A stretch of 63,449 nucleotides of DNA, filler included, from Octopus bimaculoides (GCF_001194135.2; 3 parts of 3 records of this genome joined end to end with filler, not necessarily neighbours in it), one strand, 5' to 3'. Shown: positions 57,258 to 63,449, counted from the whole stretch's first letter. Notes: a model not told the origin generated them from the letters alone. Made by a program: numbers and translations.

Positions 57258-57307
<50 letters not shown>

Positions 57308-57366
57308 GTTCTTACTAAAGCTATTTAGAGTTCAAAATCTTGAACACGTTTTCCTTATTTTTACAG

Positions 57367-57535
57367 AAGCAGGGAAGACGAAGACCGAGTCAAAGCTACG
57401 TTTTACTCTCGTTTGCATGATATGTTACCCGAAACGGATGTTCTTGTTATTGCTTGTCCTTGCACAGAACAAACGATGAACTTGATTAGTACAGAAGAAT
57501 TCCGGTTGATGAAGAAAACTTCACTTTTGGTCGAG
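57367..57535 (+). CDS. Penultimate exon of 2-hydroxyacid dehydrogenase (glyoxylate/hydroxypyruvate reductase-like) copy 1; 3' end lacks the N-x-x-R motif, possibly pseudogenised
   Basis: Acceptor tttttacag| at 57365-66 and donor |GTGAG at 57536. Translates (R)SREDEDRVKATFYSRLHDMLPETDVLVIACPCTEQTMNLISTEEFRLMKKTSLLVE, matching the family segment L-x-x-L-L-x-x-SD-x-V...P-L-T-x-x-T-x-x-L-I...F-x-x-MK. Too short for the ORF track; read by hand. Confidence 0.9.
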
Positions 57536-57922
57536 GTGAGATAAAACATCATATATGAAACATTTTAAGTCATAGCTATCTATAAACATTTAAACTTCAA
57601 AAACAATAGAGTTAGTAATGAACGTTTCCGTTTCGATCTTTACATTTATGTCCAAAAACGGGGTCTCGTTTGTATTATTCTAGATGTTAAAGTTTAGTCC
57701 AGAGTCATCCTTTAGTCTCTCAACTTCCTTCAATGTATACATTACATGTAATACATTATCTATGTATCTTGTGTTTATCATATGTTCCACTTTTGCTTTT
57801 TTCTACTTTGGATGCATAGAATGCTGCAAACGTAGGTCCTAGGGGAGAATCCATTGTAACGTCATCTATTTATTTATATAAATTTCCTTACAAATAGCGA
57901 AAAGACACTGCAATTATCTCTA

Positions 57923-57969
<47 letters not shown>

Positions 57970-58221
57970 ATTGCATATAGCTTTATCTCATGGTATCTAT
58001 ATATGTATACGTGATTTCTAATGATTTCTATCGTTTTTATCACTGAGACGTTGGCAAGCAAATTTTCTGCATCCAAACAGCAAAAATTAAAATTTAACAA
58101 ATTGATTACAGCTATAAATGCATAGAGTGGGTCGCCTTACTATGTACACAGTGAAGGAGAGTTTCTCCACCACACACACATAAATACATACCAACATGCA
58201 TACATACACACACAACACACA

Positions 58222-58597
58222 CTCTTTTACTTGTTTCAGTCATTTGACTGCGGCCATGCTGGAGCACCACCTTTAGTCAAGTAAATCGACCCCAAGACTT
58301 ATTCTTTGTAAGCCTAGTAGTTATTTTATCGGTCTATTTTGCCGAACCGCTGAGTTACAGAGACGTAAACACACCAGCATCGGTTGTCAAACACAGACAC
58401 AAAAGCACACACACACACACATATATATATATACGACGGGTTTCTTTCAGTTTCCGTCTACCAAATCCACTCACAAGGCTTTGGTCGGCCCGAGGCTATA
58501 GTAGAAGACACTTGCCCAAGGTGCCACGCAGTGGGACTGAACACGGAACCATGTGGTTGGTAAGCAAGCTACTTACCACACAGCTACTCCTGCGCCT
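58222..58597 (-). mobile_element. SINE family B, full length, in the last intron of copy 1
   Basis: Closely matches 24495-24885. Confidence 0.9.
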
Positions 58598-58887
58598 ACA
58601 TATTTATTTATTTATTTATTTATTTATTTACTTATATGAAACTACGAAAAATCTAAAATGAAACATACAAATTTGGACATAGCCATGTACTTCATGAAAC
58701 ACACACGCATACCTACCTACCTACCTACCTACCTACCTACCTACCTACCTACCTACCTACCTACCTACCTACATACATACATACATACATACATACATAC
58801 ATGCATGCATACATACATAATTTTCCCGTGTAAAGCCATTGGTTATTTTACCATTTTCCCTTTTGTTTTTCTCCTTTCTTGCCACAG

Positions 58888-59138
58888 GACAGGTAGTTGA
58901 CACCGATGCCCTTGTGAAAGCTCTTCAGTCAAATGAAATTCAAAGTGCTGCCTTGGATGTCACCGAACCCGAACCTCTGCCGCGAGGACACCCATTGTTA
59001 TCCATGCCAAATGTTATCATAACCGCTCACTGTGGAGCAGACACTTTTGAAACTCGCATAGAAATGCATGATTTATTGATAGAAAATTTGAAATGTGGTT
59101 TGGAAGGAAAAGCGATGCCGTCTGAAGTAATTTTGTAA
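58888..59138 (+). CDS. Last exon of 2-hydroxyacid dehydrogenase copy 1
   Basis: Polypyrimidine tract plus cag| at 58886-87. Encodes GQVVDTDALVKALQSNEIQSAALDVTEPEPLPRGHPLLSMPNVIITAHCGADTFETRIEMHDLLIENLKCGLEGKAMPSEVIL*, with the family ALDV-x-x-x-EP (catalytic Glu) and T-P/A-H-x-G (catalytic His) motifs. Confidence 0.95.
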
Positions 59139-59230
59139 TGCTGATATCCAATCAAGAAACAAATATTCTTAAATTCATTTTTGATTGTAATTGGGATAGT
59201 TATAAATGTGTTAATTAATCGGGAATTGTA

Positions 59231-59427
59231 AGGCGGCGAGCTGGCAGAAACGTCGCTACGTTCTGAGATTAAATTCCATCGAAGTAAGCTTTGCCTTTCA
59301 TCCTTTCGGGGTCGATATATTCAGTACCAGTTGCGTACTGGGGTAGATCTAATCGACTCCCCTCATCAAAAAAAAAAAAAAAAAAAAAAAAAAAATTCGA
59401 GCCTTGTGCCTAGAGTAGAAACGAATT
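59231..59427 (+). mobile_element. SINE family A (tail type 2) with internal A28, 93 bp after the copy 1 stop
   Basis: aggcggcgagctggcagaaacg head, A core, A-run at 59368-59395, tail gccttgtgcctagagtagaaa. Confidence 0.85.
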
Positions 59428-59652
59428 AATCGTGAATTATATATTCCTAGAAAGGTAACTGTTAGTAAATGACTGGGAATTTGTTTCATTCTTGTTCATT
59501 CCGAAAGATATACCAATCCTAGAAGATCTTTAAAAAGGACAACAATAAATTTCCCATTTTATATTTTGTTACTTGATTATTAAAACTCAATGGAAAATAT
59601 TCCTTTTGACTTTTAAGTCTTATGTTATTCTTTAATGTTTAAAGATTTTCTT

Positions 59653-59873
59653 TGGCAGAAACGTTAGCACACCGGGCGAAATGCTTAGCAGTATTTCGTC
59701 TGCCGTTACGTTCTGAGTTCAAATTATGCCGAGGTCGACTTTGCCTTTCATCCTTTCGGGGTCGATAAACTAAGTACCAATTATGCACTGGGGGTCGATG
59801 GAATTGACCTTATCCGTTTGTCTGTCCTTGTTTGTCTCCTCTATGTTTAGCCCCTTGTAGGCAATAAAGAAAT
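59653..59873 (+). mobile_element. SINE family A (tail type 1), near full length
   Basis: High identity to 12203-12435. Confidence 0.9.
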
Positions 59874-59937
59874 ATGATGTTTTCGAACTTCAGGCAAAAA
59901 CTATTTTAATAAAAAAAAAAACGACATATATTTTCAA

Positions 59938-59985
<48 letters not shown>

Positions 59986-60032
59986 GATTATTCTATGAAT
60001 CTGCCTTTAGCTTCAATGCTAAAGAATAAAAA

Positions 60033-60490
60033 TCAGTCATGAACTTCCATAGGATTGCACCTAGAAAGTTCCTTCACCCCAAACCCGAAGCACAAGACCG
60101 GACAAGGTTGTTTATAGAAGACCAGCAGTTTCCTATGCATACCATTATATGTACTTAGGGTAAAGACTCCCTTCGGTAATGAATGATCGAAGGGTTACAC
60201 CTAGAAAGTTCCCCTCCCAGGCACAAGTTCGGGCAAGGTTGTTTATGGAAGACCAGTAGTCGCCCATGTATACCAGCCTTCCCTCTCCACACCACTGATG
60301 TTATCTAAGGAAAAGGCAAAGACCGATACAATTTGGCACCAGTCACGTCACAACTCATTTCTACAGCTGAGTGAACTGGAGCAACTTGAAATAAAGTGTC
60401 TTGCTCAAGAACACAACACAAATCCCGGTCAGGGTATCGAACTCACAACCTCATGGTTGTGAACCCGACGTTCTTACCACTGAGCTATAC
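60033..60490 (-). mobile_element. SINE family C with partial internal duplication
   Basis: Minus-strand head tagctcagtggtaag (A-box) ... gagttcgatacc (B-box), then ttgagcaagacactt. Segment acacctagaaagttcc..cacaag..cggcaaggttgtttat.gaagaccag occurs twice (~60057, ~60197). Confidence 0.8.
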
Positions 60491-60648
60491 ATCACAACTT
60501 ATATCGAATATCCATGTGTCCCACAGTTTTGCTAATCAATATGAGTTGTTTGGTGATAGTCCTCATTGATTTTTCGATATTATCATCGATAATATTTTGA
60601 ATGCTTTGGATGAAATGCTGCGTTCTTAAAGAGTCTGAGAGTTTAGAG

Positions 60649-60720
60649 CAGTGGTTCCCAACCGATTTTTGGCCATGCCCCATCAAATCATTTCTAAAAT
60701 CCTGATGCCCCCTTGGGATA
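60649..60720 (+). mobile_element. hAT (Charlie-like) terminal fragment
   Basis: CAGTGGTTCCCAACC terminus preceded by 8-mer GTTTAGAG (near the NTCTAGAN target consensus). No partner TIR seen. Confidence 0.45.
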
Positions 60721-60856
60721 TTTAATTTTTGTTATTCAAAATTTGGTTAATTTTTACAATATTACCGGGAAACAAAATTTAAAAAAATAATGCGCGGAAA
60801 TCAACGAGTGAGAGTAAGAGGACTTCGGAAATTTCACTAGATCCGAGTTTTTCCCT

Positions 60857-61057
60857 CAGTTAGGTGATACAAAAAAGGAGCAACAAAACATCCAGACAGA
60901 CGACACAAAGAAAACAAGGACCTGTCATTCGCAGTTTTCTATCCTCAAAGATAATCTGGGACTCGACTGAGGATTGAAAACTCCGAATGACCCGTCCTTG
61001 TTTTCTTTGCATCGTCTGTCTGGACGTTTTCTTGTCCCTTTTTGTATCACCTAACTG
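60857..61057. repeat. Fold-back inverted repeat, ~90-bp arms, ~20-nt loop
   Basis: cagttaggtgatacaaaaa...ccagacagacga..caaagaaaacaaggac...gtcattcg.agttttc.atcctca mirrored at 60967-61057. Confidence 0.9.
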
Positions 61058-61894
61058 NNNNNNNNNNNNNNNNNNNNNNNNNNNNNNNNNNNNNNNNNNN
61101 NNNNNNNNNNNNNNNNNNNNNNNNNNNNNNNNNNNNNNNNNNNNNNNNNNNNNNNNNNNNNNNNNNNNNNNNNNNNNNNNNNNNNNNNNNNNNNNNNNNN
61201 NNNNNNNNNNNNNNNNNNNNNNNNNNNNNNNNNNNNNNNNNNNNNCTCTCTTTCTGCCTCTTTCTCTTCCTTCACTGTCGCCAGAGATAAAAAGAGTCAA
61301 ATACTCATAGGCACATCCGCACACATAAGTCTGTCTCCAGTTTATTTCTCCATAGGGAATTAAGATGGCATTACTTTCAGTACTGACCAGTTCTATACTA
61401 CATACACGCACGCACACACACACAGAGACAAACACACGTCATTTTTTAAAATAGCCACGTGTCGCTAACTATAGAAAATGTAGGTTAAAACTAGGTTAGC
61501 AGACAGTCTTAGACGGGCGTCTGATGGACTGCAATAGTTCAAAAGCTGCAGCCTGGTCTTACTTTGCGCCATGCCGAGTGTGACTGAGAATAACTAAAAA
61601 GCAATGTATGTCAGTGGGATGATCAGTCAATTAGGCTTTAATTAATGAGCAATGTCGCCACAGTTCTTTGTACTGTTAGATTTCAAACACAAATAAGTTT
61701 TTGAGTTGTGCGTGATTTGGCTTAATTATTTATCCCTCACTACCTGTCCTGTTATATCTGCCAATTCTGATGTACTTTATATAAAACATTCGAATGCAAT
61801 CGATAAAATATACAGACGCGTACAACCGAACAGATTCTCATACCTTTCGCGGAATAGAGAGACGACGGCTTGTGAATCACATAAGGTCTAATAC

Positions 61895-62288
61895 ATGCCT
61901 ACAACGATGAAACCTCCAGTTCTAATCTGCGTACAACAGTACAATGACCATAAAGAGAAAAACGAATTCATTGAACAATGTTTGAGTCGCCTGAGATCTT
62001 ACTTTCAAGTTGTTTTCTTGGATGATATTGAGCAGAATCCAAACATAAAGAAAGATATTGTTGGTGTTGTCACACAAGCCCCTATTCAACCTCTTCTACA
62101 CAAACTGTTGACAACTCTTCCGAATGTGAGAGTATATTCAAATCATGGAATGGGAGTGGATCATCTTGATCTAAAATATGCCAAAGCAAAAGGGATACGA
62201 GTCGGAAATACAAGAAATGTTGTTTCTGACAGTACAGCAGATCTTGCCATTACTTTAATGTTGGTTTCGACGCGGAAAATACTGCAGG
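61895..62288 (+). CDS. First coding exon of 2-hydroxyacid dehydrogenase copy 2 (gene continues beyond window)
   Basis: 131 codons plus 1 nt, ending CAG G|GTAAGT (donor at 62289). Contains NHGMGVDHLD...GIRVGNTRNVVSDSTADLAITLMLVSTRKI, the G-x-G-x-D-x-x-D / NT-x-x-V-x-x-x-TAD substrate-domain motifs. Start is ATG 61895 or 61907. Confidence 0.93.
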
Positions 62289-62399
62289 GTAAGTCCTGTG
62301 TTGCTTAATTCAAAATTTAAAAAACAGAAACACTATTTCGACTGATAAAAGGCGCTAAAAATTTCAATTCTAATTCAGTTAAAATGCAATCAACATCTT

Positions 62400-62560
62400 T
62401 TATCTTTTACTTGTTTCAGTCATTAGACGGTGGCTATGCTGGGGCATCGCCTTGAAGAGCTTTTAGTCAAATGATTTTTTTTGCTAAGCCTGGTACTTAT
62501 TCTATCACTAAGTTACGTGGGGGACAAACACAGACACAAAGACACACGCACGCACACACA
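62400..62560 (-). mobile_element. SINE family B 3' part, deleted
   Basis: cttttacttgtttcagtcatt.gac..tggc.atgctgg...aagcct.gtacttattctatc. Confidence 0.75.
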
Positions 62561-62563
62561 CAC

Positions 62564-62679
62564 AAAGCATGTATCCCTGCCCCGTAAAATTCGGTTGATT
62601 GTTCTTTGAGCCACGTCTTCACTACAGTTTCCACTTCCTCGTCACTGGAATAATGTTTGCCTCTCAAACCCTCTTTCAT
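62564..62679 (-). mobile_element. mariner (DD34D-type) transposase C-terminal fragment in intron 1 of copy 2
   Basis: MKEGLRGKHYSSDEEVETVVKTWLKEQSTEFYGAGIHAL matches the mariner tail L-x-G-x-x-F/Y-x-x-x-E-E-V...W...FY-x-x-GI-x-x-L. Confidence 0.8.
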
Positions 62680-63147
62680 GTAATATTTTTGTACACAAGA
62701 ACAGCATTTTTACATATCCAATTGTCTCAGGTTAAGCAACACCTACACGATTAGTTCGACGTCTGTCTTAACCGCTGGGTTTATGGTGCTGAGATATAAC
62801 AGATTTTTTGGGAAACTGATCAGGCAACTGATTTACAAAATAATAGACTCTCAGGTGTGTGCAGGTGGAACATATATTTGTTTCAAATCGATGCCAATTT
62901 AAAGCAAGGACGAATGTTATAGGCTTTTGTTCTTTTGGGGATTACTGACAGGGTCTAAGACATCTGAAAAAAATTTCGCATTCGACTTCTATTGAAATAT
63001 AAATCCTTTAATGTCCTGACCAACTTTCTTGAGTGCCACTGTGCGTTCGTACCAGAAAATCATTTGCTTTATTTTGATCAATTCCCAAATTCTTGGTAAT
63101 TTTGTAAATAGTTGCATCATCGTGTCCCAGCATATGTTGTTGTTGGC

Positions 63148-63449
63148 ACTCCGTCGCTTACGACGTCGAGGGTTCCAGTTGATACGATCAACGGAACAGC
63201 CTGCTCGTGAAATCAACGTGCAAGTCGTTGAGCACTCCACAGACACGTGTACTCTTAACGTAGTTCTCGGGGATATTCAGCGTGACACAGTGTGACATAG
63301 CTGGCCCTTTGAAATACAGGTACAACAGAAACAGGAAGTAAGAGTGAGAGAAAGTTGTGGTGGAAGAGTACAGCAGGGTTCGCCGCCATCCCCTGCCGGA
63401 GCCTCGTGGAGCTTTAGGTGTTTTCTCTCAATAAACACTCACAACGCCC
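63148..63449. mobile_element. Interspersed repeat family D (probable SINE), cut by window end; fragment also at 20889-20950
   Basis: caacggaacagcctgctcgtgaaat.aacgtgcaag at ~63190 matches caacggaatggcttgctcgtgaaattagcgtgcaag at ~20917. Confidence 0.65.

What the first reader, a model, noticed from the sequence alone, without database searches (positions are those of the whole stretch)
57527..58896. Dehydrogenase copy 1 lacks the catalytic-Arg motif, and a second AG 5 nt downstream could restore the frame
Seen: exon 57367-57535 ends TTG GTC GAG|GT (phase 0 in its own frame), but the last exon opens cag|GA CAG GTA and needs phase 1. Joining them gives L-V-E-D-R-stop (TAG at 58894-96). A second acceptor CAG at 58890-92 would give in-frame LVE|VVDTDAL. 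Established: D-2-hydroxyacid dehydrogenases have N-x-x-R-G here; this Arg binds the substrate carboxylate and forms the triad with Glu and His, both still present here (EPEP, TAHCG). Inference: the remaining ...GT CGA G is the old Arg-Gly junction after a 10-nt deletion, TTG GT[C AAT NNN xGT] CGA G, possibly between short GT(C) microhomologies. The locus is therefore either a young pseudogene or a splice-rescued pseudoenzyme lacking N-x-x-R-G-Q. The 83-codon last exon is still fully open.
Basis: partly seen in the sequence, partly recalled or inferred. Interest (0 to 1): 0.7.

Follow-up and report, generated by a model that had tools for sequence, protein, structure and literature searches.

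The report
Ten-base deletion disables an octopus dehydrogenase copy
One gene in a tandem cluster of glyoxylate-reductase-like genes in Octopus bimaculoides has lost 10 bases that encoded its catalytic arginine and set the reading frame, so it is most likely a very young dead gene copy, which is an ordinary event rather than a new kind of biology.

Summary
The piece is Octopus bimaculoides chromosome CM046620.1. It holds the last two exons of the middle gene of a three-gene tandem array of GRHPR-like 2-hydroxyacid dehydrogenases, plus exon 1 of the next gene.

Seven homologous exons were compared: two O. bimaculoides paralogues, two O. sinensis copies and two O. vulgaris copies plus a further O. 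bimaculoides copy. All seven read TTGGTAAACAT(C/T)G(C/G)TCGAG|gt, which encodes L-V-N-I-A/G-R-G. Only this copy reads TTGGTCGAG|gt, an exact 10-nt gap. Canonical splicing then gives LVE-D-R-stop.

That model also bends another splice site to bridge an assembly gap, so it is not evidence of real splicing. An older model used a weak cryptic donor instead.

The deletion is specific to the O. bimaculoides lineage (split about 34 My ago). The rest of the gene shows no other lesion and no extra relaxation (dN/dS about 0.4-0.5, like its intact orthologues), so the lesion is young.

Best reading: a recent loss-of-function deletion in a redundant paralogue. An assembly artefact, a heterozygous allele or a splice-rescued arginine-less protein cannot be excluded without reads and RNA-seq.

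The parts
57258..57307 (.). (ATT)n microsatellite at the contig edge. A 2375-N assembly gap lies immediately upstream in the source record.
   Evidence: N run at L001 2989-5363 = L004 13550-15924. Orthologues carry the same microsatellite. The Rossmann (GxGxxG) exon is expected inside this gap.
57367..57535 (+). Penultimate coding exon ('exon A', 169 nt) of the middle GRHPR-like gene. It is 176-179 nt in all relatives.
   Evidence: Translation; PF02826 hit; alignments.
57527..57535 (+). Deletion scar TTGGTCGAG. Ten nt (TAAACATCGC or AAACATCGCT) are missing between 57530/57531 or 57531/57532. The surviving CGA is the former Arg codon, now read as (GT)C GAG.
   Evidence: all seven homologous exons have TTGGTAAACAT(C/T)G(C/G)TCGAG.
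57489..57490 (+). Weak cryptic GT donor (TTA|GTACAG). The older NCBI model XP_014768356.1 used it to keep the frame (…NLI-R-QVVD…).
   Evidence: P0039 sequence compared.
57536..58887 (+). Last intron (1352 nt), with donor GTGAGA and a long polypyrimidine tract before cacAG. It holds a SINE copy and microsatellites, and no micro-exon.
   Evidence: the orthologous introns are about 570-2000 nt.
58886..58892 (+). Two acceptor AGs 5 nt apart (AG|GACAG|). The first is the ancestral site in phase 1. The second gives the in-frame 'rescue' join. A copy-specific A>C at 58890 turns AAG into CAG.
   Evidence: All six compared relatives have AAG (Lys) here. P0195 uses the second AG.
58894..58896 (+). Premature TAG reached when the canonical donor and acceptor are joined (LVE-D-R-stop).
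58888..59138 (+). Last exon. It is fully open in the ancestral frame (G)QVVDTDAL…EVIL*, carries the catalytic Glu (TEPEP) and His (TAHCG), and ends with TAA at 59136-38.
61895..62290 (+). Exon 1 of the next gene in the array (copy 2, XP_052830933.1). Its exon A, outside the window, keeps LVNIARG.

Best explanation
The locus is the middle member of a tandem array of three GRHPR-like D-2-hydroxyacid dehydrogenase genes in Octopus bimaculoides. On the O. bimaculoides lineage, a 10-bp deletion in the penultimate exon removed the codons for Asn-Ile-Ala-Arg, the loop that carries and positions the catalytic arginine. The deletion also shifted the exon's end from phase 1 to phase 0.

With the strong ancestral donor and acceptor, the mRNA reads LVE-D-R-stop. 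The product lacks the arginine and the whole last exon, which carries the catalytic Glu and His. The gene copy is therefore a recent loss-of-function allele or very young unprocessed pseudogene, tolerated because intact paralogues flank it.

Shown: the deletion relative to all relatives, the frame consequences, lineage specificity, and the absence of any other lesion.

Inferred: that the deletion is in the germline rather than an assembly artefact, that the canonical acceptor dominates, and that the protein is non-functional.
For: 1. Exact 10-nt gap versus O. bimaculoides copy 0 and copy 2, O. sinensis a and b, and O. vulgaris b and c.
2. The flanking exon and intron align continuously across the scar to the O. 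vulgaris c copy at 92%. There is no switch between paralogues at the breakpoint.
3. Canonical joining gives a stop after two codons.
4. The lost residues are Asn227-Arg230 of the 2HADH numbering. PMC6303947 calls Arg230 the most conserved active-site residue and says Asn227 and Gly231 position it. The motif is kept in 139 of 149 nearest representatives.
5. Intact relatives: O. vulgaris 327-aa and 332-aa proteins, O. sinensis 332 aa, and O. bimaculoides copy 0 at 338 aa next door.
6. Youth. Exon 1, exon A and the last exon have no other stop or frameshift. NG86 dN/dS is 0.48 for exon 1 and 0.41-0.52 for the last exon, the same range as the intact b-versus-c pair. There is no copy-specific acceleration, with 6 versus 7 derived amino-acid changes.
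7. No other indel occurs in roughly 2 kb of neighbouring coding exons of this assembly. A 10-nt loss in non-repetitive sequence is not a typical short-read assembly error.
Against: - There is no independent sequence support. The window is 100% identical to the only O. bimaculoides assembly. That assembly is highly fragmented, with 713,915 contigs (PMC10700109). The scar lies only 273 nt from a contig end next to a 2.4-kb gap.
- An otherwise perfectly intact gene with unchanged dN/dS is also what an artefact or a heterozygous allele in the single sequenced animal would look like.
- An in-frame alternative acceptor 5 nt downstream exists, and the current NCBI model uses it. Some full-length arginine-less protein could therefore be made.
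Confidence: 0.6

Rival explanations
1. Assembly or sequencing artefact: the real gene is intact.
For: The draft short-read assembly has 713,915 contigs. N gaps lie on both sides of the contig, and the scar is 273 nt from a contig end. The paralogous exons are 92-96% identical. Everything else in the gene looks functional.
Against: Sequence on both sides of the scar is copy-specific and collinear with one orthologue. No other indels occur in neighbouring coding exons. Both NCBI annotation rounds had to work around the same lesion, though they rest on the same contigs and are not independent. From general knowledge: k-mer assemblers do not usually invent a 10-nt deletion junction that is absent from the reads.
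Confidence: 0.15
2. Splice-rescued pseudoenzyme. The downstream AG (exon start 58893) is used. The result is a full-length protein that lacks N-I-A-R-G-K (…LLVE-VVDTDAL…), cannot orient or polarise a 2-keto acid, and is retained for a non-catalytic or altered role.
For: - The in-frame junction exists and is the one in the current NCBI model P0195.
- The two AGs are only 5 nt apart behind one polypyrimidine tract.
- The one base at -3 of the second AG carries a change unique to this copy, AAG>CAG, which improves the acceptor consensus. All six relatives keep AAG.
- All remaining exons are open with dN/dS below 1.
- A few natural family members lack the Arg: P0092, P0114 and P0174.
Against: - The arginine-less state is not conserved in any other species examined.
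- The dN/dS values are equally explained by a very recent lesion.
- The same NCBI model also shifts the exon 1 donor by 25 nt to bridge the gap that hides the Rossmann exon. Its junctions are therefore chosen to keep an ORF, not demonstrably taken from RNA.
- The older model chose a different fix.
- The AAG>CAG change is a post-hoc observation, with roughly a 2% chance expectation.
Confidence: 0.1
3. Real deletion, but only a heterozygous or low-frequency null allele in the single sequenced individual. The species still has a working copy.
For: The lesion is the only defect and shows no downstream decay. The genome comes from a single assembly.
Against: Nothing here speaks against it directly, and it cannot be separated from the best explanation with these tools. 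It is a sub-case of a real, recent loss-of-function deletion.
Confidence: 0.15

Closest known systems
Human GRHPR (PDB 2gcg/2h1s), GHRB subfamily of the D-2-hydroxyacid dehydrogenases
   Same: It is the best solved-structure match (E=1.5e-24). It has the same C-terminal architecture, with DVT-x-PEPLP (Glu) and P/A-H-x-G (His) aligned. Pfam PF02826 and PF00389 both match.
   Different: Human FINISRGDVV aligns to LLV---EGQVV. Asn242-Arg245 have no counterpart, and the reading frame breaks at the following intron.
Octopus vulgaris 'probable 2-ketogluconate reductase' (P0196, 332 aa) and its neighbour (327 aa); O. sinensis XP_036366603.1 and the X1 isoforms
   Same: These are co-orthologues in the syntenic tandem array. 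They share the exon structure and the phase-1 intron inside the Gly codon after the Arg. Nucleotide identity across exon A, the last exon and their flanks is 89-93%.
   Different: They keep TTGGTAAACAT(C/T)G(C/G)TCGAG (LVNIA/GRG) and an intact frame. The b/c pair is a duplication specific to that lineage: dS between b and c is lower than dS from either to the O. bimaculoides copy.
Young unprocessed (duplicated) pseudogenes, or segregating loss-of-function alleles, in tandem gene families
   Same: There is a single frameshifting indel in one member of a redundant array. Introns are retained, no further decay has occurred, and neighbours are intact.
   Different: Loss of expression or function is not shown, and an in-frame alternative acceptor is available.
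Closely spaced tandem 3' splice sites (NAGNAG-type alternative acceptors)
   Same: Two YAG|G acceptors lie behind one polypyrimidine tract.
   Different: The spacing is 5 nt, not 3, so in intact relatives the second site would break the frame. Here it restores the frame. Its usage is untested.
2HADH members with a naturally incomplete catalytic triad (for example about half of subfamily X4, His>Trp with loss of Glu; PMC6303947)
   Same: Family members missing a triad residue do exist. Three nearby representatives lack the Arg.
   Different: Those are substitutions conserved within clades. This is a frameshifting deletion confined to one species' copy.

Membership tests
D-isomer-specific 2-hydroxyacid dehydrogenase (2HADH), GRHPR/GHRB-like | NAD-binding domain PF02826 and catalytic domain PF00389 | tested here: met
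   PF02826 matches at E=2e-31 on exon A plus the last exon. PF00389 and PF02826 are both precomputed on the gene models P0039 and P0195.
D-isomer-specific 2-hydroxyacid dehydrogenase (2HADH), GRHPR/GHRB-like | Catalytic Arg within N-x-x-R-G (beta-E/alpha-G loop) | tested here: not met
   The four codons are deleted. The role of these residues is described in PMC6303947.
D-isomer-specific 2-hydroxyacid dehydrogenase (2HADH), GRHPR/GHRB-like | Catalytic Glu and His | tested here: met
   Both are present in the last exon (TEPEP, AHCG) and aligned to GRHPR. They are out of frame under canonical splicing.
D-isomer-specific 2-hydroxyacid dehydrogenase (2HADH), GRHPR/GHRB-like | GxGxxG dinucleotide-binding motif | tested here: inconclusive
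   No such exon is found in the assembled sequence of this copy. Orthologues place it 0.4-2.2 kb upstream of exon A, which is inside the 2375-N gap.
D-isomer-specific 2-hydroxyacid dehydrogenase (2HADH), GRHPR/GHRB-like | Continuous ORF across the ancestral splice junctions | tested here: not met
   The phase 0 donor meets a phase 1 acceptor, giving a stop at 58894-96.
Unprocessed pseudogene | Disabling lesion relative to functional homologues | tested here: met
   A 10-nt frameshifting deletion is unique to this copy.
Unprocessed pseudogene | Neutral evolution (dN/dS near 1, accumulating lesions) | tested here: not met
   dN/dS is 0.41-0.52 and no further lesion is present. This is compatible only with a very recent inactivation, so 'pseudogene' here means a young null allele.
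Unprocessed pseudogene | No functional product | not testable with these tools
   No reads, RNA-seq or proteomics are available here.
Pseudoenzyme (retained catalytically dead homologue) | Dead state conserved across species or under purifying selection | tested here: not met
Pseudoenzyme (retained catalytically dead homologue) | Expressed full-length protein | not testable with these tools
   It exists only as the NCBI model P0195, which uses the second AG. That model is demonstrably ORF-driven elsewhere.

The most novel reading that the evidence does not exclude
After the deletion, splicing shifted to the AG 5 nt downstream. A copy-specific AAG>CAG change helped by creating a consensus acceptor. 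O. bimaculoides would then make a full-length 2-hydroxyacid dehydrogenase homologue that lacks the catalytic arginine loop. It would have been caught within a few million years of becoming a pseudoenzyme, through a frameshift compensated at the splice-site level.
Probability: 0.08. Interest if true: 0.5.

Novelty: new member of a known kind. Interest (0 to 1): 0.2.

Why it matters
Its main value is for annotation. The protein deposited for this locus (299 aa, named glyoxylate reductase/hydroxypyruvate reductase) is an ORF-preserving construct. It lacks both the Rossmann exon, which is hidden in an assembly gap, and the catalytic arginine, so it should not be counted as an active enzyme in gene-family or metabolic inventories.

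It also documents a 3-4 gene GRHPR-like tandem array in octopuses with lineage-specific duplication (b/c in O. vulgaris and O. sinensis) and lineage-specific loss, which is normal birth-and-death dynamics.

Only if the rescue splice proved dominant would it become a neat example of a frameshift compensated by a shift in acceptor site.

Tried and rejected
1. A micro-exon supplying N-x-x-R. No N-x-[STAGC]-R occurs in any forward frame of the intron, and no plausible AG…GT mini-exon was found. Orthologues show the motif belongs to exon A.

2. Exact-ORF look-ups of the last-exon ORF, the copy 2 exon 1 ORF and the old model P0039 in public assemblies, including read-run assemblies, found nothing. 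No independent read-level support could be obtained.

3. The first two word-indexed protein searches missed all octopus proteins. They were reached only through a cluster look-up, the exhaustive representative search and a third search.

4. A chimeric join of two paralogues at the scar was rejected. The alignment to one orthologue is continuous across the scar. The b/c copies are a later duplication in the other lineage.

5. Slippage between 5-nt TTGGT direct repeats applies only to the derived b-type sequence. The a, c and d types, and hence the likely ancestor, have ATCGCT, which leaves 1 nt of microhomology.

6. Pro>Ala before the catalytic His as a sign of decay was rejected. The intact neighbour, copy 0, has Thr at that position.

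7. A copy-specific rate acceleration was not seen.

8. tRNA and Rfam scans of the piece found nothing.

9. A literature search for octopus GRHPR found only an ink proteome paper, which was not followed.

Full report
**Origin of the sequence.** The piece 57258-63449 is 100% identical to Octopus bimaculoides GCA_001194135.2, chromosome CM046620.1. It is one contig (57258-61057), an N gap, and a second contig. In the record a 2375-N gap ends immediately before 57258. This assembly is highly fragmented, with 713,915 contigs (PMC10700109).

**Check of the observation.**
- Exon 57367-57535 translates to (x)SREDEDRV…KKTSLLVE and ends TTG GTC GAG|GTGAGA.
- The last exon follows a long polypyrimidine tract and cacAG (58886-87). 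It starts GA CAG GTA GTT and is open to TAA at 59136-38 as (G)QVVDTDAL…TEPEPLPRGHPLL…ITAHCGADT…EVIL.
- The canonical join reads GAC AGG TAG, that is D-R-stop at 58894-96. Starting the exon at 58893, after the second AG at 58891-92, gives LVE|VVDTDAL.
- The two exons match Pfam PF02826 at E=2e-31. Their best solved relative is human GRHPR (2gcg/2h1s, E=1.5e-24), where FINISRGDVV aligns to LLV---EGQVV.
- A 12-sequence alignment shows the same gap, with N and R nearly invariant elsewhere.
- Of the 149 closest representatives from an exhaustive search, 139 carry N-x-[STAGC]-R-[GP], and most of the rest still have the Arg.
- PMC6303947 describes this Arg as the most conserved active-site residue, part of the Arg/Glu/His triad. 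It describes the flanking Asn and Gly as the residues that position the Arg.

**Proof of a 10-nt deletion.** Protein cluster look-ups and searches led to the annotated neighbours and to syntenic loci in two other octopuses.
- O. bimaculoides has three genes in tandem (L004). Copy 0 is P0197, 338 aa and intact. Next is the gene in question, and then copy 2 (XP_052830933.1).
- O. sinensis (L002, no Ns) has copies a, b and c. O. vulgaris (L005, no Ns) has copies b, c and d.
- The 3' end of the homologous exon reads TTGGTAAACATCGCTCGAG|gt in O. bimaculoides copies 0 and 2, O. sinensis a and O. vulgaris c. It reads TTGGTAAACATTGGTCGAG|gt in O. sinensis b and O. vulgaris b.
- Only the studied copy reads TTGGTCGAG|gt. 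The gap is exactly 10 nt.
- The exon, the upstream intron and more than 200 nt of downstream intron align continuously across the scar to O. vulgaris c at 92%. There is therefore no paralogue switch at the breakpoint.
- The deleted bases are TAAACATCGC (or AAACATCGCT). With the ATCGCT ancestor shared by types a, c and d, only one T of microhomology flanks the deletion. The 5-nt TTGGT direct repeat exists only in the derived b type.
- No micro-exon is present in the intron.

**Orthology and age.** Synonymous distances show that b and c are closer to each other (dS 0.18 for exon 1, 0.055 for the last exon) than either is to the O. bimaculoides copy (0.27-0.30 and 0.085-0.094). The studied gene is therefore the single pro-orthologue of a b/c pair that duplicated later in the O. 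vulgaris/O. sinensis lineage. The deletion arose on the O. bimaculoides side of a split dated at about 34 My (PMC10700109).

The rest of the gene is clean.
- Exon 1 (132 codons, L004 10070-10465), exon A and the last exon have no stop or other frameshift.
- dN/dS is 0.48 for exon 1 and 0.41-0.52 for the last exon. The intact b-versus-c pair gives 0.24-0.79, and the copy 2/d pair gives 0.18.
- Distances to outgroups and polarised amino-acid changes (6 versus 7) show no acceleration specific to this copy.
- As a rough inference, with about 800 nt of coding sequence evolving neutrally at these rates, further disabling mutations would be expected within some millions of years. The lesion is therefore much younger than the speciation, or the gene is still under selection, or the lesion is not real.

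**What the gene models show.**
- The current NCBI product (P0195, 299 aa) reads …KKTSLLVEVVDTDAL….
- The older product XP_014768356.1 (P0039, 262 aa) reads …TMNLIRQVVDTDAL…. It uses a weak cryptic donor, TTA|GTACAG, at 57488/57489.
- Both models jump from exon 1 to exon A without the GxGxxG exon. To do so they abandon the consensus exon 1 donor ACT A|GTAAGT for a GT 25 nt downstream (…TCAGG|GTAGGT).
- The models are thus built to keep an ORF across a gap and a frameshift. They are not independent evidence that the 57535>58893 junction is used.
- In the orthologues the Rossmann exon lies 0.4-2.2 kb upstream of exon A. In this copy that position falls inside the 2375-N gap.

**Mechanism.** The ancestral donor (GAG|GTGAGA) and acceptor (Y-tract cacAG|G) are intact and strong. 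The default product is therefore an mRNA with a stop two codons into the last exon. From general knowledge, a stop in the last exon would not be expected to trigger junction-dependent mRNA decay. The likely result is a protein of about 250 aa that lacks the Arg, Glu, His and the C-terminal return to the catalytic domain, and is therefore inactive.

The second AG is ancestral coding sequence (AAG Lys, then G) in all relatives. In this copy alone it is CAG, which fits the YAG acceptor consensus better. That change is the only hint in favour of selected rescue, and it is post hoc, with roughly a 2% chance expectation. The rescued protein would lack N-I-A-R-G-K and gain E. By the roles given in PMC6303947, it could not bind or polarise a 2-keto acid.

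**Verdict.** The most likely reading (0.6) is a real, recent, lineage-specific loss-of-function deletion in a redundant tandem paralogue. The sub-case of a heterozygous allele (0.15) cannot be separated from it with these tools. An assembly artefact (0.15) and a functional splice-rescued pseudoenzyme (0.1) remain possible. This is ordinary gene-family turnover. The practical point is that the deposited protein for this locus should not be treated as an active enzyme.

Noticed in passing
L002 14314-14315 (O. sinensis CM016876.1, last exon of the 'b' copy): A 1-nt deletion (AAA>AA in CTTGTGAAAGCTC) shifts the frame of the last exon. This explains the aberrant C-terminus (…DALVKLFSQMKFKVLPWMS…) of XP_036366603.1. 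The O. vulgaris b copy, which diverged about 2.5 My ago, has AAA and a 327-aa product. The change is either a very recent independent inactivation or a long-read homopolymer error.
   Followed up: partly
window 62696-62827 (= L001 10802-10933) and L001 16714-16911: The NCBI model of copy 2 (XP_052830933.1, 289 aa) contains two exons with no homology to dehydrogenases. It lacks both the Rossmann exon and the catalytic last exon. N gaps sit where those exons are expected (L001 11556-12816 and 14177-15543). [quoted passage not shown]
   Followed up: partly
L004 10463-10487 (upstream of the window): Both NCBI models of the studied gene replace the consensus exon 1 donor (A|GTAAGT) with a GT 25 nt downstream. 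This adds SKWFYYSG so that the frame can be kept while skipping the unassembled Rossmann exon.
   Followed up: yes
window 60857-60947 and 60968-61057: A long inverted repeat (arms of about 76-100 nt, 87-96% complementary, 20-nt loop) directly abuts the N gap at 61059-61245. It may be a foldback or MITE-like element, or an assembly effect at the contig end.
   Followed up: partly
window 59254-59358 (similar copy by eye at about 59660-59790); L002 16325-17521; L005 8515-9893: A SINE-like element of about 105 nt downstream of the gene is single-copy here. In O. sinensis and O. vulgaris it forms a tandem array spaced about 182 nt apart, with at least 7 units, between the arrayed genes. No tRNA or Rfam match was found.
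   Followed up: partly
window 59023-59025 (codon GCT, Ala in ITAHCG); copy 0 in L004 (VITTHCG): The Pro that precedes the catalytic His in nearly all family members is Ala in the studied copy and Thr in the intact neighbouring copy 0. Both O. bimaculoides genes have lost it, while all O. sinensis and O. vulgaris copies keep Pro.
   Followed up: partly
L003 (CM046620.1 22.03-22.06 Mb): A more distant GRHPR gene (P0049, 327 aa, about 51% identical) lies 16 Mb away on the same chromosome. It sits head-to-head with another 2-Hacid_dh gene (357 aa). The octopus 2HADH repertoire is therefore larger than the array studied here.
   Followed up: no
window 58219-58570 and 62405-62540: Copies of a common octopus interspersed repeat (cttttacttgtttcagtcatt[tg]gac…ccatgctgg…) lie in the last intron of the studied gene and in intron 1 of copy 2. 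[quoted passage not shown]
   Followed up: no
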